The notes below the pieces were generated by a model. The model saw only the letters and a program-made list of their open reading frames with translations. It was not told where the DNA came from and made no database searches. From positions 186,001 to 250,000 of IMG/VR virus record IMGVR_UViG_3300033997_000092: 64,000 nt of DNA. The stretch is one strand, 5' to 3'. Within the stretch, counting starts at the first letter, position 1; each line of letters opens with the position of its first letter. This document shows, one piece after another, positions 6,055 to 24,563 of this stretch. A program made the position numbers and the translations under genes.

Positions 6055-6519
6055 TTATATCGCTACTGCCAGAGCAAGTGCTGCCAGTATTTTTAAACTA
6101 ATGCTTTCAATCTGATTCCGCAACTGTTCTTCCCTTCGTGCATCTATTTCCATATCCAATAACACGTAAGCTTTGTTGGCCCTCATTTCTTCCAGTATAG
6201 CCAATTCACGAATCAAGTTTGCTCTTTGTACAGTAAGTGCCAATATGCTGTTAGCTTGTTCAACCAACGCTGCGTTGGACTCTGCACTTATATAAGCCTG
6301 CTCGATTTTATAAAGCTCTGCAGGATCAACAAGCGCCCAAACTTTACCGTTCGTATCAACATATTCCTTTACGTCTGAATCAAATGCTTCCGGTAATGCT
6401 ACAGGAGTAATGTCCTTATGGACAAATTCCTCTATTTTCGTAGTCTGCATCACAACAGGTTCTTTTTGTTGTGACGCACAACCTACTAATAAAAACAACG
6501 CTAACAGCAACACACGCAT
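6055..6519 (-). CDS. Outer-membrane lipoprotein, spanin candidate (o-spanin or u-spanin-like)
   Basis: Start at MRVLLLALFLLVG-C (lipobox; SD GGAG), coiled-coil body, hydrophobic C-terminus ILAALALAVAI. The track's N-terminal extension lies inside the upstream gene. Confidence 0.7.
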   Translation of the reverse strand: MRVLLLALFLLVGCASQQKEPVVMQTTKIEEFVHKDITPVALPEAFDSDVKEYVDTNGKVWALVDPAELYKIEQAYISAESNAALVEQANSILALTVQRANLIRELAILEEMRANKAYVLLDMEIDARREEQLRNQIESISLKILAALALAVAI

Positions 6520-6520
6520 A

Positions 6521-6874
6521 CTATTCTCCAGTTCGGCGCTTCTTCTGGCCTTTATTGAAGTTTGCAATCTGCTGGCTACTATCCGAATTTTCACTTTCTT
6601 TAGCTACTTGGTCGAATGCGGCCTGGCCCTGTTGAGCTACTTCCTCAGCTACTTGCTGTTCCTGCTCTATGTTAACTTGCAGTTTTTGGTCAGCTATGAT
6701 TTTATCACCAATGTGGTTTTTATCAATCGTGTCTAATTCATCTGCAACATCTTTTGTAGTTGGTTGGCGTTTAGCCATAACTACAGTGGCACCCAATGTT
6801 AGAATGGCAAGCACTGCCATCAAAATGTACTTGCCCCATTTCTTATACCAAACTTCTGTTAATTCTGGTTCCAT
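6521..6874 (-). CDS. Inner-membrane spanin (i-spanin) candidate
   Basis: Basic N-terminus, one TM (YILMAVLAILTLGATVVMA), Q/E-rich coiled coil, directly upstream of the lipoprotein. Confidence 0.6.
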   Translation of the reverse strand: MEPELTEVWYKKWGKYILMAVLAILTLGATVVMAKRQPTTKDVADELDTIDKNHIGDKIIADQKLQVNIEQEQQVAEEVAQQGQAAFDQVAKESENSDSSQQIANFNKGQKKRRTGE

Positions 6875-6922
6875 TTTATATTACCTTATGTTTCGGTCAC
6901 ATACTCACATACAGAGACACAT

Positions 6923-7261
6923 TTAATTTTCCACAATATACGTTGCACATATAGAATACCAATTATATCTGTTTGCTGTAAATTCTTGGAATTGACCTCG
7001 AGTTATTCTAGCAACAAAGGCATCTATTTGCGCGGTATCTGTGATAGCAACGCCGTTTTTGGAGAACGATACGTTGTTATTTACCAGATTTTTAATATAG
7101 ACGTATCTTGTACCTCCAGGTTCATACAAATACAAATACAAATACCCTGCGGCATCCTCAACCCAGGTATTTTCTTTATTAACTGTGAGCCTGTCATAAG
7201 CACATACTGTGACAAATTCAGGCTCAGCTTCTCTCTTATAGATATGTTGGTGCAATGGCAT
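6923..7261 (-). CDS. Small paralog family D protein (D3)
   Basis: QHIYKRE..VTVC / WVEDAAGYLY / ARITRGQF..YNWYSIC aligns with the 9711-10040 protein. Confidence 0.7.
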   Translation of the reverse strand: MPLHQHIYKREAEPEFVTVCAYDRLTVNKENTWVEDAAGYLYLYLYEPGGTRYVYIKNLVNNNVSFSKNGVAITDTAQIDAFVARITRGQFQEFTANRYNWYSICATYIVEN

Positions 7262-7285
7262 AAAGTATCCAGAGTTGGATCCTAC

Positions 7286-7621
7286 TCAGTAGGTAGGCTC
7301 GTTGTTGTTTTGTTCAATTCCAGTACGTACACCACCGTCTTTATTCAACATACTGTCAATCATATAGCTGATGCTGATAAACGTGAGCATACTCGGGTTA
7401 GGATCGGTTAACAGGATACCTAAATAACTTGTCAACACACCGAAGATAACAAGAACACTGTTGCCTTTATTTGTAGTCCAGTACTTGACCCAATCCAAAT
7501 TTCCCTGCACACATTTTTTAACATAGTGAGCAGCTACTCCCAAGAAAGTAATCAACAAGGACAGTACGTAATAGTCCCATGTATAGTTTGCTAAGGGTCC
7601 TAATAAAATGGATGAATCCAT
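7286..7621 (-). CDS. Holin candidate
   Basis: 111 aa, two to three hydrophobic segments, charged C-terminal tail, SD AGGAG, near the spanin genes. Confidence 0.55.
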   Translation of the reverse strand: MDSSILLGPLANYTWDYYVLSLLITFLGVAAHYVKKCVQGNLDWVKYWTTNKGNSVLVIFGVLTSYLGILLTDPNPSMLTFISISYMIDSMLNKDGGVRTGIEQNNNEPTY

Positions 7622-18443: not shown

Positions 18444-18671
18444 TTAATTGACGCGAGCTTCGCCTGTTAATGGGACAGAGAATTCAACACGCAAAGTGTT
18501 TGAATCTACCGATGAAACTGACTTAGGCAGTATCTTTTGGAGCTTGCCTTGCCAGTTAACAAACACGTCCACAAGAACATTAGTTCTTCCAAGATTGTGT
18601 GGGATGCTCCACACAGTGTTTGCATGATCTTGTTTGTGCGAATAGCCTGCACCACGAACTTTAAGTGTCAT
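18444..18671 (-). CDS. Single copy of a ~65-aa 'H-N-L-G' fibre module
   Basis: WSIPHNLG..VLVDV..ILPKSV..DSNTLRVEF..TG; the same module occurs in three neighbours. Confidence 0.65.
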   Translation of the reverse strand: MTLKVRGAGYSHKQDHANTVWSIPHNLGRTNVLVDVFVNWQGKLQKILPKSVSSVDSNTLRVEFSVPLTGEARVN

Positions 18672-18683
18672 AGTTAGGCCTCG

Positions 18684-19304
18684 TTACATACAAAGAACAG
18701 TACCAGTCACTGCATTAGTGAATGTCAATACTGTTTGGTTAGTTGTTGTGTGTTGGACTGAGCTAGGTAATAACTCAAATCCATCCGATGTAATGAAACG
18801 GATGATAGGAGCATATCCCAGCATGTGGTTCACAGTTACTTCTGTTGTAGCCACGTCCACTTCCATTTCATATGCAACATCAGGCTTAGTCATGCCGTCC
18901 AGGTTACCTATCATTATGATAGCGTGACCAGTAGTTGCTTGCGCGAAAGTAATCTCAACTGTATCAGCATCAATGCCTTCAACGCTGTCAGGAACAACAA
19001 GCTGGTTATCGCTGTTGTATACTTGGACAATTACTTTAGCACTGTTCATACCGTGTGGGACAGTCCACACAGCACTTGCAGAGTCTTGCTGGTGTATGTA
19101 AGTATTACGCTCTTGCAGCAGAGGTACCCACAGTACACTTTGACCATACGCTATAGCAAACAGCAAACGACCATCTACTACAGCTACACGGTTTGGAACA
19201 GCATATTGTACGCCAGCAGAGTCATCACCTAAAACAACATGACTCAAAGCATTACCTTGCATGTCCAGACCGCCGAACATCGTTAATCCGCCTAAGACCT
19301 TCAT
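18684..19304 (-). CDS. Fibre-associated protein with two 'H-N-L-G' modules
   Basis: True start MKVLGG (SD AGGTG), downstream of the terminator; modules WTVPHGMN... and VTVNHMLG.... Confidence 0.65.
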   Translation of the reverse strand: MKVLGGLTMFGGLDMQGNALSHVVLGDDSAGVQYAVPNRVAVVDGRLLFAIAYGQSVLWVPLLQERNTYIHQQDSASAVWTVPHGMNSAKVIVQVYNSDNQLVVPDSVEGIDADTVEITFAQATTGHAIIMIGNLDGMTKPDVAYEMEVDVATTEVTVNHMLGYAPIIRFITSDGFELLPSSVQHTTTNQTVLTFTNAVTGTVLCM

Positions 19305-19329
19305 GGATTCACCTTTGGTTCGTTGGGAC

Positions 19330-19360
19330 AAAGAAAAATGGGGAGACAAAGCTCCCCATT
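19330..19360 (-). terminator. Intrinsic terminator after the 566-aa fibre gene
   Basis: Minus strand AATGGGGAG-ctttgt-CTCCCCATT followed by TTTCTTT. Confidence 0.8.
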
Positions 19361-19379
19361 CATCAATCACTGAGGCCTA

Positions 19380-21080
19380 TTAGGCAGCAGGAGCAACAGT
19401 TGTTACGATCACTTTGCACTTAACGGCGATAGCGAAAGTAACTGTCAGGCTGTTACCATCTACGTAGGTGATGGTGTCTGGCAGAACAACTTCGTCTGAT
19501 TCGTCAACAACAGTTACCTGGCAGTATTTCGTGCCAATGTTGTGTGTAACAGTGTGTGAAGCAGAAGCAGTGTCAGTACCTGTTGCAGTGCTGTCGTAGA
19601 TGAACTGGCCAGCGCTGATACGAGTGTTGACGTTGCTGATTGAAGTGTTGATACCAGATACTGCGGTATCTAAGTCCAGCTTACGTGCTGGGTTAGCATC
19701 GGCAGTAGGAGCAATCACAGTAATCGCGCCTGTGAAATCAGCACCATCTAAACGGCCGTACAATGTGTCCAGATGTGCTTCATTCACTTTAACGCCAGTA
19801 GCATCAACAGTGATAGAAGAATCTGAAGCCAGAACAGCCAGGTCAACACCTGAACCGCCAGTTAAACCGTTACCAGCAACGTCACCTAACATAGTAGATG
19901 CAACGCCCTGAGAAGCGATTTGTAAACCACCAGAACCGTCGAAGCTCAAGCTGTTGTTCGCGCCGACTTTGATAGCCAGTTGGCCATTGCTGTCAGTAGT
20001 TTCGTCAGTACCGTTGATAGTCAGCATCAAACCGCGGTTCAGGTACAGATCTAAACCAACTTCGTCTGAAGGCAGTTCAGCGATACCAGCACCTAAGTTA
20101 ACGCTGATTGTGTTACCAGATTTGCTCAGACCGATACCAGCATTCACGCCAGCCAGACCACCGAACTCACCCCATGCGCCGCCCTGCAGAGCTAACCAGG
20201 TACCAGCAGTTGTATTCCATGCCAGCGCACCGTTAGGGCCTGATACAGAAATGTCATAGCTGATAGACTGGATTGCACCAGTAGCATCAACAACTACGAT
20301 GTCACCAGCAGCAGGAGTCAGAGTGTTTGGATCTGTGAAGTCTGAACCATCTACATAGATGTAACGGCCAGCAGCATCAACGAAATCGCTTTCGTAACCA
20401 ACTACGTCAGCTTGGAAGTCCAGGCCAGCGATAGCATTTTGCACGTCGATTAAACGGGCAGCATCTGTAGCGTTTTCTGGAGTAGCCAGACCGATGATTT
20501 TGTTGTTGTTCATCGCTAACTGACCGAACATGCTGTCGCCAGCTTGGTTTACTGGAGTGTAGCCCAGATTGTCTTGCTTGCTGTCAATTTGGGTCTGTAC
20601 GTTATCAGTCACACCTGACAGGTAACCCAGCTCAGTAGTAGTTACAGCAGATGCAGCAACTTTACCAGAACCATCAGACACTAAAGCCTTGCTTGTATCC
20701 AGGTCAGAAGAAACGATGGTTGTAGCAGCACCAGTGACAGTATCCTGTTTGGTACCTAAACGAGTTTCAACGTGACCCTTAGATACAGCAGCCAGGTTAT
20801 CTGAACCAGACTGATCAGTGCTTGATAACAGCAAGTCGGCTTCCATAGCCACTGTGCCGTCTTTCTTCACGTAATCGTTCAGGTTGCCACCTTTAGCAAC
20901 TGTCTGTACGCTGGTACCATCGTAATACTTCAGCGCTTTTTCAGTTGAGTTGTACCACAGGCGAGACTCATAGCCAGCTAACTCGCCAACCGTTGGGTCA
21001 GTTGCCAGGTTTTCTGGTTTCATGTTGCGGATGGTACCGCCGCCGACTAATGTGATATTACCAATTACTTGCATCGTCAT
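19380..21080 (-). CDS. Abundant fibre/whisker-like virion protein
   Basis: 566 aa, G/A/T/D-rich, KQD..TGAATTI and TELGYLSGVT fibre segments, C-terminal H-N-I-G module. Codon choice (GGT/GCT/CTG/AAC) and a terminator immediately downstream suggest high expression. Confidence 0.6.
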   Translation of the reverse strand: MTMQVIGNITLVGGGTIRNMKPENLATDPTVGELAGYESRLWYNSTEKALKYYDGTSVQTVAKGGNLNDYVKKDGTVAMEADLLLSSTDQSGSDNLAAVSKGHVETRLGTKQDTVTGAATTIVSSDLDTSKALVSDGSGKVAASAVTTTELGYLSGVTDNVQTQIDSKQDNLGYTPVNQAGDSMFGQLAMNNNKIIGLATPENATDAARLIDVQNAIAGLDFQADVVGYESDFVDAAGRYIYVDGSDFTDPNTLTPAAGDIVVVDATGAIQSISYDISVSGPNGALAWNTTAGTWLALQGGAWGEFGGLAGVNAGIGLSKSGNTISVNLGAGIAELPSDEVGLDLYLNRGLMLTINGTDETTDSNGQLAIKVGANNSLSFDGSGGLQIASQGVASTMLGDVAGNGLTGGSGVDLAVLASDSSITVDATGVKVNEAHLDTLYGRLDGADFTGAITVIAPTADANPARKLDLDTAVSGINTSISNVNTRISAGQFIYDSTATGTDTASASHTVTHNIGTKYCQVTVVDESDEVVLPDTITYVDGNSLTVTFAIAVKCKVIVTTVAPAA

Positions 21081-21108
21081 TCACCTTTTGGTTGTTGAAT
21101 TTTGCATA

Positions 21109-21861
21109 TCACAGTATGCAAACTATTTCCATACCTTCCTGCTTCAAAGAATCTAACAGCGATTCGTAGTCGGCATGAAGTTTAGGATCCGATTCCAGAC
21201 TAACACTATCTATGTAGGACTTGATGCACAGTTTGTGCCCCTGGATGTAACGGCTTTCTCTGTAAACAGACAGGCGCATTACAGGCATTGAAATTGATCT
21301 GTCTCTGTGGATAGCTAAGTCCAACAAATCAATCGTAAGAAACGGGTCGCACGATTTCTTGGAGCCAAATATAAGGCAGTCCATTTCGTGCATTACAATA
21401 CGCAAGTGGTTCATGTATTGTATTAGAAAATTATTGAGATCTGTTACGGCAGCAGTAGTGTTATTATCAAGTAGTTTGTTAATCCGAAACACAAGGTGGT
21501 CTTTGTATTTATCGGATACTACCATGAGAATCAACGCCAACTTGACATCTATGTCAGGATACTTCATCCTAGTTACGTGAACAGATTTACTCATACCATC
21601 CAAGAATTTCTCGGATAGAGTTTTTATGATGTATGTGTCTACTGTGGCTACTTTGCTGTTACGCAGTGCCATATAGACTTCATTGGACCAATCAAGTATT
21701 TGCTCAAGCACCGTGCATATTATTGCTTTGGTGCTATCGTCGAACTTGTAGGTAGATGTGTTGGTCAAGCTATCCAAGATAGTAAACCTAGCATTGTGAA
21801 AAGCAATACCATTAAGACTTATCATAGCTTGGAAATCGAGGTCATCAGTCAGGAATTTCAT
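21109..21861 (-). CDS. Hypothetical soluble protein (last gene of the four-gene envelope module)
   Basis: 250 aa, no TM segment or signal; ATGA overlap with the upstream gene. Confidence 0.7.
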   Translation of the reverse strand: MKFLTDDLDFQAMISLNGIAFHNARFTILDSLTNTSTYKFDDSTKAIICTVLEQILDWSNEVYMALRNSKVATVDTYIIKTLSEKFLDGMSKSVHVTRMKYPDIDVKLALILMVVSDKYKDHLVFRINKLLDNNTTAAVTDLNNFLIQYMNHLRIVMHEMDCLIFGSKKSCDPFLTIDLLDLAIHRDRSISMPVMRLSVYRESRYIQGHKLCIKSYIDSVSLESDPKLHADYESLLDSLKQEGMEIVCIL

Positions 21862-22421
21862 TTGAGATCCTTCACCTCTCCAACGCCCATAAGTTCACCG
21901 GCGGCTCTAGCATTAGGACCAGAGCCTATCAGTAAACCTGTGATGCTAGATAACTTACTAACGATACCATTTACTTGTTGTCCTAAGACACGCAGTTCGG
22001 CATCAATTGTCATCAACTTAGCCTGAGCAGGATCGGACATACTCGACCTTTGTAGATCTTTGAGCATATCTGTAACGCTGTCGATTTCATCGATCAGTTT
22101 TCGTGCATCCAAGTCAGCGGTCCGTATATACTCTACCAAGATATTGTACGTCATCTGGCAGGTTTTTAGGACCTCAGCTATTTGATATTCTGTTTTGCTA
22201 TTTTCAACGTGGAGTTGAATCGTTTTACTAGCCTTATCCAAAGCTTCTCTGTATTCAGAGAGCTTAGTGCTCCATTCTTGTTTTTCTGCTTCCAGTTCTT
22301 CCAGCTGGCGCAATTTTGGTATAACGTACATTATGAAAAAGAACGCTCCAGATATAAGAGCAAGCAGTAATGTAGTAGTACCTACCGGCACCGTAGCCAG
22401 AAATTCAAATACTATATCCAT
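21858..22421 (-). CDS. Bitopic membrane protein with long coiled coil
   Basis: TM TLLLALISGAFFFIMYVI followed by KLRQ (suggests C-in) and heptad-rich helix. Confidence 0.7.
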   Translation of the reverse strand: MDIVFEFLATVPVGTTTLLLALISGAFFFIMYVIPKLRQLEELEAEKQEWSTKLSEYREALDKASKTIQLHVENSKTEYQIAEVLKTCQMTYNILVEYIRTADLDARKLIDEIDSVTDMLKDLQRSSMSDPAQAKLMTIDAELRVLGQQVNGIVSKLSSITGLLIGSGPNARAAGELMGVGEVKDLK

Positions 22422-22438
22422 AGCAGTAGTCCACCGCC

Positions 22439-22741
22439 TTATTTAAACGTAGAGGTTCCGCATTGCTTGTCGCTAGTTTCAATAACTATCCTTTTAGCTC
22501 CTACGACATTATTGTCCTCAGTGACTATGACAGTAGCTATCGAACTGCTTAGCTCCAAGCACTGGTGTCCTGGAGCCCTGTCAACACAGATTGCACTTAG
22601 ACATCCTACGTATTCGGATTTGATTGCATGATCTCTATCGTTCTTCGACTGCTGCTGATATTGCACGCCAGCGATAACTATACCAATCAACACAACAATC
22701 AACACCAAAAACGAAGACATCCTGTATTTATCGATTTTCAT
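22439..22741 (-). CDS. Bitopic membrane protein with four-cysteine periplasmic domain
   Basis: Basic MKIDKYR, TM FLVLIVVLIGIVIAGV, then a ~70-aa domain with 4 Cys. Confidence 0.7.
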   Translation of the reverse strand: MKIDKYRMSSFLVLIVVLIGIVIAGVQYQQQSKNDRDHAIKSEYVGCLSAICVDRAPGHQCLELSSSIATVIVTEDNNVVGAKRIVIETSDKQCGTSTFK

Positions 22742-23649
22742 TTTACTATCTCGTCAATATGTTCGACAGCTTGCACTGGACGGAATCCTAATGTCTCCAT
22801 CCTGTGTATATTAGCATACAGCCTTGTTTTAAGCTGAGCTGTCTTCGCTGTTCCGTCTAAGAATGCACCAATACCCGCATAGTCCAGTTGAAGTATTATT
22901 GCCTCATTGGAATCACCAAACCTATAGCCTCCGACATCTAAGTGGGTGCGGTTATATCGCACCAATGTCTTCTTAATGTCGACCACAAGCTTATGGTTTG
23001 TATGTTCATCATCTGCAAGTTCATACATACAATTGATGATTACGCCTTTATTATGTCTGTTTAGTACGCGAAGTTTAGACTCCAATTCCTGCACAGAACG
23101 GACAGATATTGTTTGAATTTGCTTTTCAGGTATACCAGCTTTTAAAATCGCATCCTTGTAGATTTCAGACGCACGTTTACCTTTTAATGACCCATCATCC
23201 ATGATAAAGAACTTACTTGGGTCGAAATTTAATGCTTTAGTGAAGGAAATTAAACGACTAACGGGATTGTCTTCGTGAAAGTCACTTCCTGTTACTGAGA
23301 ACGAAAACTCCATGACTTTTTTCTTAGGAAAGGCCGCACGGACCTCTTTTGATAGACCAGAACCATGTACTACAATAATCTCAGGGTCGATCCTTTTGAT
23401 GTCATCAATAACGCTGTCTATTAGGAATCGTTTATGTCCAACAGACTTTCCAAAATCCATTTTCAAATAAAAAGAGTATACCCTGTATTTCGTACTACGG
23501 TGAGATATATAACTCGCCGCTGCATTTCCATAATAAGCAGATATTGGATTCTGGTTTAGAAAATATATAACAGGTTTGCTTTTGTCTTGGTATTCCATAC
23601 CGAACACAGGAAATACCAAGACAAGTAGCAATAGAAAGCGCTTTATCAT
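22738..23649 (-). CDS. Secreted periplasmic-binding-protein (ABC substrate-binding / sensor type I)-like protein
   Basis: Sec signal MIKRFLLLLVLVFPVFG. YSFYLKMD, IKRIDPEIIVV, FIMDDGS and SVQELESKL follow the pattern of ABC_sub_bind-type sensor domains (by eye). Confidence 0.5.
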   Translation of the reverse strand: MIKRFLLLLVLVFPVFGMEYQDKSKPVIYFLNQNPISAYYGNAAASYISHRSTKYRVYSFYLKMDFGKSVGHKRFLIDSVIDDIKRIDPEIIVVHGSGLSKEVRAAFPKKKVMEFSFSVTGSDFHEDNPVSRLISFTKALNFDPSKFFIMDDGSLKGKRASEIYKDAILKAGIPEKQIQTISVRSVQELESKLRVLNRHNKGVIINCMYELADDEHTNHKLVVDIKKTLVRYNRTHLDVGGYRFGDSNEAIILQLDYAGIGAFLDGTAKTAQLKTRLYANIHRMETLGFRPVQAVEHIDEIVK

Positions 23650-24563
23650 GCTACCGCAGGTGTTGTTGTTATTACAACACGTCCTACAATAGGAATTTGC
23701 GTCCTGACAATAATGAAATTTTTATCAGGAAGTTCGATTGATTCAGGTATGATTTGTGCATAAACTTCAGGAGCATCAGGAAATTCAGGGTCTTCCCCTT
23801 CACTTGATGCCAATAACCATACTTGAGCAATTATGTTGTATGAGTCCAGCTCGTGGTGAATAATAACCTCAGAACTAGGTTCATTGATTACATGGACATA
23901 GAATCTAGCACCCGCAACGCCTCCACCGACATCACCGCCTGTACCTGTCTCTATATTCTGCAATCTACGTTTCAATTCAATGATGTCTTCTTCAGCCTGT
24001 GTGAGTCTGACATTCATTTCCATCATTATGTTGAAGTAGTTGTTCGACTGTTGGCTTAGTATTGTCCTGAATACACCGTATGGAAATACTTCAGCATTTG
24101 CATATTGTTGTCCTGGCCCCACCGTTCTAGGATATAGAGGTCCTGTCAGCGTCTGACCGCCACTCAATCGTACCAAGTTAGGATGTGCATCAGTATCCCG
24201 TGTGTGCTTCTCTAAACTTGTCGGATCAGCCAATCGTAAACGATCTGCCTCATCATAATACTGGTTTTCTGTTGCGGTCGCATAGTCAAACAACTCGGTC
24301 CATGTGTGTTGTCTGTTGCCACTTACGTTCTTGGAGACACGCTTCAGCAACTTAAAATAATCAGCATCATTTTCACCTGACACTAACCAACACACATTTA
24401 ATGGTAAAGAGTTGTTTATGGGTTCGTCACTTCCGACATAGATATAAATGATTTGACCTACATCGTTACCAAACTCTAACAGAATAGACTGCTCTTGCGT
24501 TAATCCATAACCTACTGCACGTACATAACAGTCATTGATTAACGTCTGTAGTTGCTGGTCCAT
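23646..24563 (-). CDS. Tail-fibre-like protein with C-terminal 'H-E-L-D' module
   Basis: HTRDTDAH and LSGGQTLTGPL fibre motifs, a coiled coil and the C-terminal module. Confidence 0.55.
   Translation of the reverse strand: MDQQLQTLINDCYVRAVGYGLTQEQSILLEFGNDVGQIIYIYVGSDEPINNSLPLNVCWLVSGENDADYFKLLKRVSKNVSGNRQHTWTELFDYATATENQYYDEADRLRLADPTSLEKHTRDTDAHPNLVRLSGGQTLTGPLYPRTVGPGQQYANAEVFPYGVFRTILSQQSNNYFNIMMEMNVRLTQAEEDIIELKRRLQNIETGTGGDVGGGVAGARFYVHVINEPSSEVIIHHELDSYNIIAQVWLLASSEGEDPEFPDAPEVYAQIIPESIELPDKNFIIVRTQIPIVGRVVITTTPAVA

What the first reader, a model, noticed from the sequence alone, without database searches (positions are those of the whole stretch)
21109..23649. Four coupled genes that look like a complete periplasm-to-cytoplasm relay inside the virion operon
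Seen, in order: (i) a Sec-exported 303-aa protein patterned like type I periplasmic-binding/sensor domains; (ii) an N-in/C-out bitopic protein with a 4-Cys periplasmic domain; (iii) a probably N-out/C-in bitopic protein with a long cytoplasmic coiled coil; (iv) a 250-aa soluble protein. Two of the three internal junctions are ATGA overlaps, and gene (i) is also ATGA-coupled to the upstream fibre gene. Exported and membrane proteins are out of place among fibre genes. Known: such binding domains feed histidine kinases and diguanylate cyclases, and T4 lysis inhibition (RI-T) senses periplasmic cues. Inference: an undescribed phage sensing system that could tune lysis timing or superinfection exclusion late in infection.
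Basis: partly seen in the sequence, partly recalled or inferred. Interest (0 to 1): 0.76.

Follow-up and report, generated by a model that had tools for sequence, protein, structure and literature searches.

The report
Phage envelope-spanning binding-protein gene cassette
A giant phage and its relatives carry four linked late genes for a secreted nutrient-binding-type protein, two oppositely oriented membrane proteins and a cytoplasmic partner; together they look like an undescribed device reaching from periplasm to cytoplasm, but what it does is not shown.

Summary
Four minus-strand genes lie at 21109-23649, with three ATGA overlaps. Gene (i) has a conserved export signal, and its AlphaFold model (pLDDT 89) matches only type I periplasmic-binding folds; the nearest family is PF04392. 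Gene (ii) is N-in/C-out with four conserved periplasmic cysteines. Gene (iii) is N-out/C-in with a cytoplasmic coiled coil and a conserved C-terminal tail. Gene (iv) is a soluble five-helix bundle plus a small alpha/beta domain with no informative structural match.

All four genes occur in the same order in 22 of 22 related jumbo-phage loci and in PaBG, Y3, JA11 and Yoloswag. The triad (i)-(ii)-(iii) also occurs in two T4-like contigs in different tail-gene contexts, there with an unrelated fourth gene, so it moves as a unit.

A separate cluster with holin-like and spanin-like architecture lies about 15 kb away, so the cassette is probably not the core lysis machinery. The products are absent from PaBG's small virion proteome.

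The function is inferred. My best guess is periplasmic-cue control of a late event such as lysis timing (confidence about 0.4). Receptor masking and a role in tail or fibre assembly remain open. I found no published description.

The parts
22738..23649 (-). Gene (i), 303 aa: exported protein with the type I periplasmic-binding fold (nearest family PF04392 ABC_sub_bind). Signal peptide about residues 1-17. Family-conserved residues include N34, P35, Y39, Y40, G41 (closest homologues), P89, D152, N206, D213, E215, N233, H236, N248, E249.
22439..22741 (-). Gene (ii), 100 aa: bitopic, N-in/C-out. TM 8-26. About 70-aa periplasmic domain with four conserved cysteines (C47, C52, C61, C94; motif C-x4-C...C...C).
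21858..22421 (-). Gene (iii), 187 aa: bitopic, N-out/C-in by the positive-inside rule. Short conserved amphipathic N-terminus, TM 16-34, a conserved Pro after the TM, about 150-aa cytoplasmic coiled coil, and a conserved extreme C-terminal motif (here GEVKDLK; in relatives D-L-R-x-L-R).
21109..21861 (-). Gene (iv), 250 aa: soluble cytoplasmic protein. Five-helix bundle (8-168) plus a small alpha/beta domain (174-249). No informative structural match. The 'ABC transporter' label of phrog_19088 and RefSeq is unsupported.
23646..23649 (-). ATGA overlap coupling the upstream 305-aa fibre-like gene to (i)
22738..22741 (-). ATGA overlap coupling (i) to (ii)
22422..22438 (-). 17-nt spacer between (ii) and (iii) containing GGCGGTGGA (Shine-Dalgarno-like)
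21858..21861 (-). ATGA overlap coupling (iii) to (iv), preceded by GGAGAGGTGAAGG

Best explanation
The four genes encode one envelope-spanning protein module that is made late together with the tail-fibre proteins.

Shown:
- (i) is exported and has a two-lobed type I binding-protein fold.
- (ii) puts a small domain with four conserved cysteines in the periplasm and almost nothing in the cytoplasm.
- (iii) puts about 15 conserved residues in the periplasm and a long coiled coil with a conserved C-terminal tail in the cytoplasm.
- (iv) is a soluble cytoplasmic helical-bundle protein.
- The genes are translationally coupled and inherited together, and (i)-(ii)-(iii) move between phage lineages as a unit.

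Inferred:
- (i) binds a small periplasmic ligand, or a partner, in its cleft and docks on the periplasmic parts of (ii) and/or (iii).
- (ii) and (iii) pair through their transmembrane helices.
- The state is passed along the coiled coil of (iii) to (iv), possibly through the C-terminal tail.
- The output is most likely control of a late, membrane-linked event. Lysis timing is the best candidate. This would work like the T4 RI (periplasm) / T (membrane) / RIII (cytoplasm) system and the phiKZ pair of gp142 holin and gp143 cytoplasmic regulator, but with a binding-protein-type receptor added.
For: Fold and export of (i).

Topologies, consistent across 26 homologues each. Conserved motifs in (ii) and (iii).

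Coupling: ATGA overlaps. No strong promoter or terminator lies inside the cassette on the coding strand.

Co-inheritance: 22/22 IMG/VR loci plus the named phages.

Mobility: the triad lies between tail tube and portal in L009, and between a gp2-like gene and gp15/tube/sheath in L010.

Purifying selection.

Precedents: a single-TMD holin with a large cytoplasmic domain, regulated by an adjacent cytoplasmic protein, inside a late structural region (PMC12894885). Binding-protein folds of this family serve as periplasmic sensor domains of histidine kinases (Atlas structure rows 2-3).
Against: No protein-protein contact, ligand or phenotype is shown.

No known output domain is present.

(iii) and (iv) show no homology to phiKZ gp142/gp143 or to any holin family.

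The fourth gene is replaced by an unrelated protein in L009 and L010, so (iv) is not an obligatory partner.

A separate cluster with holin-like and spanin-like architecture exists. This fits a regulatory role but also fits no link to lysis at all.

Late timing is inferred from gene position only.
Confidence: 0.4

Rival explanations
1. Receptor masking, superinfection exclusion or anti-readsorption. An exported protein set encoded beside the fibre genes blocks or alters an envelope component used for adsorption or DNA entry. This would protect the infected cell and the progeny, as T5 Llp, phi80 Cor and T4 Imm/Sp do.
For: In the jumbo group the cassette sits inside the fibre cluster, ATGA-coupled to a fibre-like gene. 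(i) is the fastest-evolving of the four: mean pairwise identity 22.5% against 26-33% for the others, as expected for a part that tracks a host surface or periplasmic target. (ii) has the size and layout of small periplasm-facing exclusion proteins. That blocker genes lie next to receptor-binding genes in T5 and phi80 is general knowledge.
Against: The known examples are single small proteins, mostly made early or in lysogens. They need no cytoplasmic coiled coil or soluble partner. In L009 and L010 the triad is not next to fibre genes but next to tube, portal and terminator genes. The cassette is conserved across phages of very different hosts.
Confidence: 0.2
2. A role in morphogenesis: a membrane-anchored platform or chaperone for tail or fibre assembly, or minor virion components.
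For: In all three genomic contexts the cassette lies inside tail or fibre modules. Its neighbours are virion proteins: phrog_16122 and PaBG gp257 by mass spectrometry.
Against: (i) carries a conserved export signal, and (ii) keeps four conserved cysteines on the periplasmic side. Most of both proteins is therefore outside the cytoplasm, where virions assemble. PaBG gp253-256 are not among the identified virion proteins, though only 14 abundant bands were analysed. No hit to any structural or chaperone family.
Confidence: 0.15
3. The cassette is the core holin/antiholin set itself: (iii) is the hole-forming holin, (iv) its cytoplasmic regulator, and (ii) with or without (i) the periplasmic antiholin.
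For: (iii) has one TMD and a highly charged soluble domain, mirroring the phiKZ class IIIB holin, and is coupled to a cytoplasmic protein as gp142 is to gp143. The weak nearest Atlas neighbours of (iii) that have a family include BhlA holin and Mu releasin clusters, at scores of 0.72-0.74 that the tool flags as often chance.
Against: A conserved cluster with a roughly 110-aa multi-TMD holin-like protein, a TM/charged protein and a u-spanin-type lipoprotein lies at window 6055-7621 and in JA11. There is no endolysin gene in or beside the cassette, and no homology to holin families.
Confidence: 0.1
4. A nutrient-uptake auxiliary gene: (i) is a solute-binding protein that feeds a host ABC transporter, and the other three genes are unrelated neighbours.
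For: The nearest family, PF04392, consists of ABC-transporter substrate-binding proteins.
Against: No permease or ATPase gene is nearby. (iv) is not an ABC protein by fold. (i) is always followed by (ii) and (iii), even when the surrounding genes differ. It sits in a late structural operon.
Confidence: 0.05

Closest known systems
PF04392 (ABC_sub_bind) substrate-binding proteins, e.g. PDB 3LKV (Vibrio cholerae) and CD0873 (Clostridioides difficile, 6HNI/6HNJ); more broadly type I binding folds (ribose-binding protein, LacI/CcpA cores, LuxP)
   Same: Two-lobed alpha/beta fold over the whole mature protein and an N-terminal export signal. Conserved polar and aromatic residues follow the beta-strands, where type I binding proteins place cleft residues; this placement is read from the secondary-structure string, not from coordinates. 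One homologue matches the Pfam model at 6.7e-6.
   Different: The window protein itself matches no Pfam model. Identity to solved structures is 8-14%. There are no transporter genes nearby. It is encoded by phages and always followed by two small bitopic proteins.
Binding-protein-dependent transmembrane signalling (LuxP-LuxQ, TorT-TorS, NspS-MbaA; general knowledge)
   Same: A free periplasmic type I binding protein next to membrane proteins that reach into the cytoplasm. LuxP is among the structural matches.
   Different: No kinase, cyclase or phosphodiesterase domain is present. The membrane part is split into two single-pass proteins of opposite orientation. The cytoplasmic part is a coiled coil plus a separate protein of unknown fold family.
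T4 lysis inhibition set RI / T / RIII (PMC8385771, PMC11413866 abstracts; gene order from general knowledge)
   Same: A three-compartment layout: a roughly 100-aa protein facing the periplasm, a single-pass membrane protein, and a cytoplasmic partner. These are late genes, and the holin gene lies beside fibre genes.
   Different: No sequence-family match for (ii), (iii) or (iv) in PHROGs or Pfam. The orientation of the large domain differs from T. T4 has no binding-protein-fold component.
phiKZ gp142 class IIIB holin with gp143 cytoplasmic lysis regulator (PMC12894885)
   Same: [quoted passage not shown]
   Different: No homology. The TMD orientation is reversed: gp142 is N-in, (iii) is N-out by charge. 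The phiKZ cassette also carries an endolysin and spanins, which this one lacks.
T5 Llp and phi80/T1 Cor receptor-blocking proteins (general knowledge)
   Same: Exported proteins encoded next to receptor-binding or fibre genes.
   Different: Those are single small outer-membrane lipoproteins. Here there are four proteins, one of them cytoplasmic. A lipobox-like LGAC occurs in the Erwinia-phage copies of (i) but is not conserved in the family.

Membership tests
Type I periplasmic-binding fold / PF04392 ABC_sub_bind | Two Rossmann-like alpha/beta lobes joined by a hinge | tested here: met
   AF2 pLDDT 89.2. Foldseek PDB gave 159 hits at E<=1e-3, and all 50 rows listed are this fold. Atlas TM 0.77 to a PF04392 cluster.
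Type I periplasmic-binding fold / PF04392 ABC_sub_bind | Sequence match to the Pfam model above its gathering score | tested here: not met
   The window protein has 0 Pfam families at E<=0.1. Only 1 of 23 homologues matches PF04392, at 6.7e-6 (marked weak). A profile of the family finds no solved relative by sequence.
Type I periplasmic-binding fold / PF04392 ABC_sub_bind | Export signal at the N-terminus | tested here: met
   Synonymous-dominated variation in codons 4-26.
Type I periplasmic-binding fold / PF04392 ABC_sub_bind | Partner ABC permease and ATPase genes | tested here: not met
   None in the cassette or its flanks. The (iv) model is a helical bundle with no ABC match.
Type I periplasmic-binding fold / PF04392 ABC_sub_bind | Binds a small ligand in the inter-lobe cleft | not testable with these tools
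Needs thermal shift or a crystal structure.
Holin (for gene iii) | At least one TMD, small size, charged soluble domain | tested here: met
   One TMD at 16-34, 187 aa, 20 K/R and 27 D/E.
Holin (for gene iii) | Homology to a described holin family | tested here: not met
   No holin family in Pfam or PHROGs. No similarity to phiKZ gp142.
Holin (for gene iii) | Timed lethality, premature triggering by uncouplers, release of endolysin | not testable with these tools
   Needs expression assays of the kind used in PMC12894885.
i-spanin (for gene iii) | N-in/C-out with a periplasmic coiled coil and a partner outer-membrane lipoprotein gene | tested here: not met
   The charge distribution gives N-out/C-in in 26/26 homologues. 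No lipoprotein gene is embedded or adjacent. Spanin-like genes lie elsewhere, at 6055-6874.
T4 RI-type antiholin (for gene ii) | N-terminal signal or anchor plus a roughly 70-aa periplasmic domain | tested here: met
   TM 8-26 and a 74-aa C-terminal part with four Cys.
T4 RI-type antiholin (for gene ii) | Sequence-family membership | tested here: not met
   No PHROG family at E<=0.1. No direct comparison with the RI sequence was made.
Two-component or second-messenger sensor | HisKA/HATPase, GGDEF/EAL or another catalytic output domain | tested here: not met
   No such domain in any of the four proteins.
Known anti-phage defence families | Match to a PADLOC model | tested here: not met
   Only sub-threshold hits driven by coiled coil or chance.

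The most novel reading that the evidence does not exclude
Phages of several myovirus lineages carry a portable receptor module of a new kind. A secreted binding-protein-fold receptor reads a small molecule in the host periplasm, such as a nutrient, a cell-wall fragment or a quorum signal. Through two single-pass proteins with no enzymatic domain, it sets the timing of lysis or another late decision in the cytoplasm. That would be phage sensing of the extracellular or periplasmic chemical environment during lytic growth, distinct both from T4 lysis inhibition and from the cytoplasmic quorum-sensing receptors of temperate phages.
Probability: 0.2. Interest if true: 0.85.

Novelty: new variant of a known kind. 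Interest (0 to 1): 0.62.

Why it matters
Phages are known to read their surroundings in only a few ways: T-even lysis inhibition, arbitrium peptides and hijacked quorum-sensing receptors. A binding-protein-type periplasmic receptor wired to the cytoplasm of the infected cell would be a new route for such sensing during lytic growth, and it would point to ligands that matter to jumbo phages.

Even if the function turns out different, this is a conserved, mobile, four-protein envelope module with two orphan protein families, the one containing (iv) and its replacement in L009/L010. It is mis-annotated in RefSeq as 'ABC transporter' or 'hypothetical', with truncated starts.

It is directly testable, because cultured phages with tractable hosts carry it: PaBG on Pseudomonas aeruginosa PAO1, JA11 on Dickeya solani, and Yoloswag and Y3 on Erwinia amylovora.

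Tried and rejected
DNA and word-based searches
- blastn of the region and tblastn of (i) against the phage collection found nothing.
- The word-indexed protein search of (i) found only its own cluster. The exhaustive HMMER search was needed.
- The search for related loci with (i), A1, A6 and A7 failed for lack of conserved stretches or close relatives.

Family and structure searches
- Pfam, NCBIfam and PADLOC gave nothing significant for any of the four.
- A sequence profile of the (i) family found no solved structure.
- The Atlas search was uninformative for (iii) and (iv).
- Foldseek of the (iv) model against the PDB gave only generic helical bundles, with nothing at E<=1e-3. AFDB clusters gave a single unnamed 233-aa look-alike (TM 0.76).
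- Profile comparison of the (iv) family with the fourth gene of L009/L010 was negative. So were comparisons with phiKZ gp143 and gp142.

Looking for the endolysin
- Whole-genome searches with PF00959, PF01464, PF00182, PF01510 and PF13539 found nothing. PF01471 gave only a weak hit in a 171-aa ORF with no catalytic domain. The endolysin remains unlocated.

Readings rejected
- The 'ABC transporter' label for (iv).
- (iii) as an i-spanin.
- Any histidine-kinase or cyclase output.
- The apparent lack of a signal peptide in JA11 and Yoloswag (i). This is an annotation artefact: in-frame upstream starts restore the signal.

Literature
- Searches found no description of a phage binding-protein-fold cassette.
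Full report
**What is there.** The window is part of a 261,032-bp virus record with direct terminal repeats. The finding covers four minus-strand ORFs:
- (i) 22738-23649, 303 aa
- (ii) 22439-22741, 100 aa
- (iii) 21858-22421, 187 aa
- (iv) 21109-21861, 250 aa

Read on the coding strand, the junctions fibre-like gene/(i), (i)/(ii) and (iii)/(iv) are ATGA overlaps. A 17-nt spacer separates (ii) from (iii). Upstream lie a 305-aa fibre-like protein, a 161-aa protein and a collagen-repeat fibre protein. Downstream lies a 566-aa protein of phrog_16122, 'virion structural protein'. The consensus scan finds no strong promoter-like or terminator-like site inside the cassette on the coding strand. Co-transcription with the fibre genes is therefore likely, but it is inferred.

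**Gene (i).**
- The sequence begins MIKR, then 12 hydrophobic residues, then VFG.
- The word-indexed search found only its own cluster. The exhaustive HMMER search found 23 cluster representatives. In their alignment most carry the same kind of N-terminal hydrophobic signal. The invariant or near-invariant residues are P89, D152, N206, D213, E215, N233, N248, E249 and L287. The seven closest homologues also keep N34, P35, Y39, Y40, G41 and H236.
- The AF2 model built on that alignment is confident (pLDDT 89.2, pTM 0.84) and alternates strands and helices.
- Foldseek against the PDB gave 159 matches at E<=1e-3, and all 50 rows listed are type I binding folds. They include LacI/CcpA ligand-binding cores, ribose- and glucose-binding proteins, LuxP, and the PF04392-type proteins 3LKV and CD0873. 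TM scores are near 0.5; hinge opening in two-lobed proteins may lower the global score (not tested).
- The ESM Atlas independently placed the protein next to PF04392 clusters (feature score 0.93, 199 shared features; TM 0.77 over residues 22-303). Its structural neighbours include histidine kinases that use this domain as a periplasmic sensor.
- At the sequence level the link is thin. The window protein matches no Pfam model, and one distant homologue matches PF04392 at 6.7e-6.
- I therefore file (i) as having the fold and resembling PF04392. I do not file it as a demonstrated family member, and not as a transporter component, because no permease or ATPase genes are nearby.

**An apparent counter-example resolved.** The annotated JA11 and Yoloswag homologues of (i) lack a signal peptide. 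Their reading frames are open upstream. An in-frame ATG with a good ribosome-binding site in Yoloswag, and a GTG in JA11, restore a basic n-region, a hydrophobic core and the first beta-strand. The same M-A-x...R-x-R...LGACLW...A-D/E N-terminus recurs in the Erwinia-phage and Dickeya-phage loci. tblastn with the extended Yoloswag protein covers 100% of the query in most of these relatives. In those phages the start of (i) overlaps the end of the upstream gene by about 115-135 nt. In the window phage there is no such overlap, and contigs from other samples show 7 synonymous changes out of 8 in codons 4-26. This indicates that the signal region is translated.

**Genes (ii) and (iii).** I built HMMs from seven cassettes and searched all fetched loci, then analysed 26 distinct homologues of each.
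- (ii) always has 1-4 K/R (with 0-2 acidic residues) before a strongly hydrophobic TM. In 24 of 26 homologues it has four cysteines after the TM, in a conserved pattern (E-x-V-x-C-[ILV]-[ST]-A-[IV]-C ... C-x-[ED]-[FL] ... G-A-x-R-[ILV]-[IV] ... C). Four conserved cysteines on the side opposite the basic flank fit an oxidised periplasmic domain, so (ii) is N-in/C-out.
- (iii) has 0-1 K/R and 1-2 acidic residues in its roughly 15-residue conserved amphipathic N-terminus, and 2-5 K/R just after the TM, in all 26. That gives N-out/C-in.
- The rest of (iii) gives only coiled-coil-type similarities to SMC, Rad50 and LmuB. A crude count of hydrophobic residues at heptad a/d positions is compatible with a coiled coil over most of it.
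- The extreme C-terminus of (iii) is a conserved short motif ([DE]-[LV]-[RK]-x-L-[RKQ]). This suggests a docking peptide (inference).

**Gene (iv).**
- It has no TM segment.
- The family has 37 members at 90% clustering, none with a Pfam domain.
- The AF2 model is confident (pLDDT 90.6, pTM 0.88). It has five long helices (8-168) and a small alpha/beta domain (174-249).
- Foldseek against the PDB gave nothing at E<=1e-3. AFDB clusters gave one unnamed 233-aa protein (TM 0.76/0.81, 16% identity) and otherwise generic bundles.
- The 'ABC transporter' name attached to phrog_19088 and to RefSeq copies has no support.

**Conservation and mobility.**
- The phage belongs to the group of Pseudomonas phages Lu11 and PaBG, phage NCTB, the Dickeya JA phages and the Erwinia phages Yoloswag, Y3 and Alexandra ('Lupandier group', PMC7412058).
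- In JA11, Yoloswag, Y3, PaBG and Sen-NF the gene order is the same as in the window: ILEI-domain giant protein, small ORF, collagen fibre, fibre, fibre-like protein, (i), (ii), (iii), (iv), virion protein.
- In 22 of 22 IMG/VR loci retrieved with the (iv) family, all four families are present in order. The same holds for metagenomic contigs L004-L007, including a 182-kb Tara Oceans scaffold.
- Two more distant homologues of (i) lie in T4-like contigs in other contexts. In L009 the order is terminase, sheath, tube, [318-95-232-305 aa], tube fragment, TnsA-like, gp2-like, portal. In L010 it is fibre-chaperone genes, gp2-like, [343-97-165-303 aa], gp15-like, tube, sheath.
- There the first three genes match the (i), (ii) and (iii) HMMs. 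The two fourth genes are homologous to each other (4e-24) but not detectably to (iv).
- So (i)-(ii)-(iii) is the portable core and the cytoplasmic fourth component is exchangeable.
- Across pairs of cassettes, (i) is the most divergent (mean identity 22.5%), followed by (iii) 26.1%, (iv) 30.6% and (ii) 33.0%.
- One oddity is the Alcaligenes phage Afa-NA1 record, which has (iv) without (i)-(iii). That 78-kb record looks like a partial or rearranged copy of a Sen-NF-like genome.

**Is it lysis machinery or virion material?**
- About 15 kb further along the same strand, at the end of the long leftward gene block, there is a separate cluster:
  - 7286-7621: 111 aa, about three hydrophobic segments and a charged tail, which is holin-like.
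  - 6923-7261: 112 aa.
  - 6521-6874: 117 aa, N-terminal TM plus a Q/E-rich helical part.
  - 6055-6594: the probable start is M26, giving MRVLLLALFLLVGC, with a C-terminal hydrophobic tail. It hits phrog_23384 'lipoprotein' at 6.8e-9 and Rz-like spanin families weakly.
- JA11 has the same arrangement (gp070, gp069, gp068). gp068 is a clear lipobox protein with a C-terminal TM, which is the architecture of a unimolecular spanin.
- These assignments rest on architecture only, since no family match supports the holin-like ORF. They still make it unlikely that the four-gene cassette is the core holin/spanin set.
- No endolysin was located with seven Pfam families.
- For virion content, the only accessible data are PaBG's 14 gel bands. 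They include gp257 (the downstream neighbour), gp261 and gp263, but not gp253-256. This is weak negative evidence. The Y3 proteome paper is not in the library.

**How it most likely works.**
- The compartments of the four parts are shown as far as sequence can show them.
- Contacts and output are inferred. A small bitopic protein with essentially no cytoplasmic part, (ii), cannot signal alone. A bitopic protein with essentially no periplasmic part, (iii), cannot sense alone. They are always adjacent and always follow an exported binding-fold protein. The simplest reading is a TM-paired heterodimer that links the periplasmic receptor to the cytoplasmic coiled coil and, through its conserved tail, to (iv).
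- The best precedents for small late-expressed phage proteins arranged across the inner membrane are lysis-timing systems. One is T4 RI/T/RIII (abstracts of PMC8385771 and PMC11413866). The other, described recently, is the phiKZ holin gp142, with one TMD, a large cytoplasmic domain and a tiny periplasmic one. The adjacent cytoplasmic protein gp143 shifts its triggering time. That cassette lies directly upstream of the sheath gene (PMC12894885).
- (iii) and (iv) resemble gp142 and gp143 in layout but not in sequence.
- I therefore rank regulation of lysis timing by a periplasmic cue first, at about 0.4 overall. Next come receptor masking or exclusion (0.2), a role in morphogenesis (0.15), being the holin proper (0.1) and nutrient uptake (0.05).

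**Population data.** The region is found near-identically in subsurface, wastewater and drinking-water metagenomes. Contigs from four runs laid on 21000-23700 show no insertions, deletions or joints. One wastewater contig spans the whole region with 18 substitutions. Of the 17 that are listed, 12 are synonymous and 5 are not. A more distant drinking-water strain shows 27 synonymous and 5 non-synonymous changes among the listed sites. All four genes are thus under purifying selection. The 'RNA' runs are metagenomic libraries and do not show transcription.

**Novelty and limits.**
- Searches of the paper library found no description of a phage-encoded binding-protein-fold cassette. Database names are 'hypothetical', 'membrane protein' or the unsupported 'ABC transporter'.
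- The fold of (i) and the idea of binding-protein-dependent transmembrane signalling are known. New here are the partners, the split single-pass transducer with no enzymatic domain, and the phage setting.
- I rate it a new variant of a known kind. There is a real but minority chance that it is a new kind of phage sensing device.

Noticed in passing
window 6055-7621, minus strand: A probable separate lysis-type cluster at the end of the leftward late gene block. It contains a 111-aa holin-like protein with about three hydrophobic segments (7286-7621), a 112-aa soluble ORF (6923-7261), a 117-aa protein with an N-terminal TM and a Q/E-rich helical part (6521-6874), and a lipoprotein with a C-terminal hydrophobic tail, which is u-spanin-like (6055-6594; real start probably M26). 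JA11 gp070-gp068 have the same layout.
   Followed up: partly
L001:4328-5191 (JA11) and L002:4142-5152 (Yoloswag); the same pattern in L013-L034: The deposited start codons of the (i) homologues are too far downstream. In-frame upstream starts restore a signal peptide and the first beta-strand. They make the gene overlap the 3' end of the upstream fibre-like gene by about 115-135 nt.
   Followed up: yes
window 21109-21861 and 23646-24563; RefSeq copies in L001 and L002: Two database labels look wrong. 'ABC transporter' (phrog_19088) is applied to (iv), a helical-bundle protein. 'HNH endonuclease' (phrog_24148) is applied to the upstream 305-aa protein, whose C-terminal part is shared with fibre-like and virion proteins.
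   Followed up: partly
window 18444-18671, 18684-19370, 19380-21080, 23646-24563: A C-terminal domain of about 60 aa (pattern ...H..G......V.V.........P......D.N...V.F...) recurs at the ends of several neighbouring fibre-like ORFs, including a 75-aa ORF that is little more than the domain.
   Followed up: no
L009:7945-8862 and L010:7837-8748: In the two T4-like contigs the fourth cassette position holds a 303-305-aa protein with several conserved cysteines. The two copies are homologous to each other (4e-24) but unrelated by profile comparison to (iv). It has no family match.
   Followed up: partly
L012 (Alcaligenes phage Afa-NA1, PV550095) and L011 (Salmonella phage Sen-NF, PV359490): These are two short records (78 and 108 kb) with jumbo-phage-type fibre clusters and neighbouring genes of identical length (177, 819, 432 and 756 nt), despite different stated hosts. 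Afa-NA1 lacks (i)-(iii) but keeps (iv). They may be partial or rearranged assemblies.
   Followed up: no
G000:C1:104391-104906 (L039:1096-1611, minus strand), outside the window: A 171-aa ORF has a weak PG_binding_1-like N-terminal motif and a low-complexity P/Q/E-rich tail, with no catalytic domain. No endolysin was found in the genome with seven common Pfam families.
   Followed up: partly
window 21000-23700: Near-identical copies of this phage region occur in subsurface, wastewater and drinking-water metagenomes from several studies.
   Followed up: partly
L020-L034, N-termini of the (i) homologues: The Erwinia-phage copies of (i) carry a long Arg-rich n-region (e.g. SRSRSRQR) and an LGAC sequence that fits a loose lipobox pattern. 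Whether they are Sec, Tat or lipoprotein substrates is open. The window protein has neither feature.
   Followed up: no
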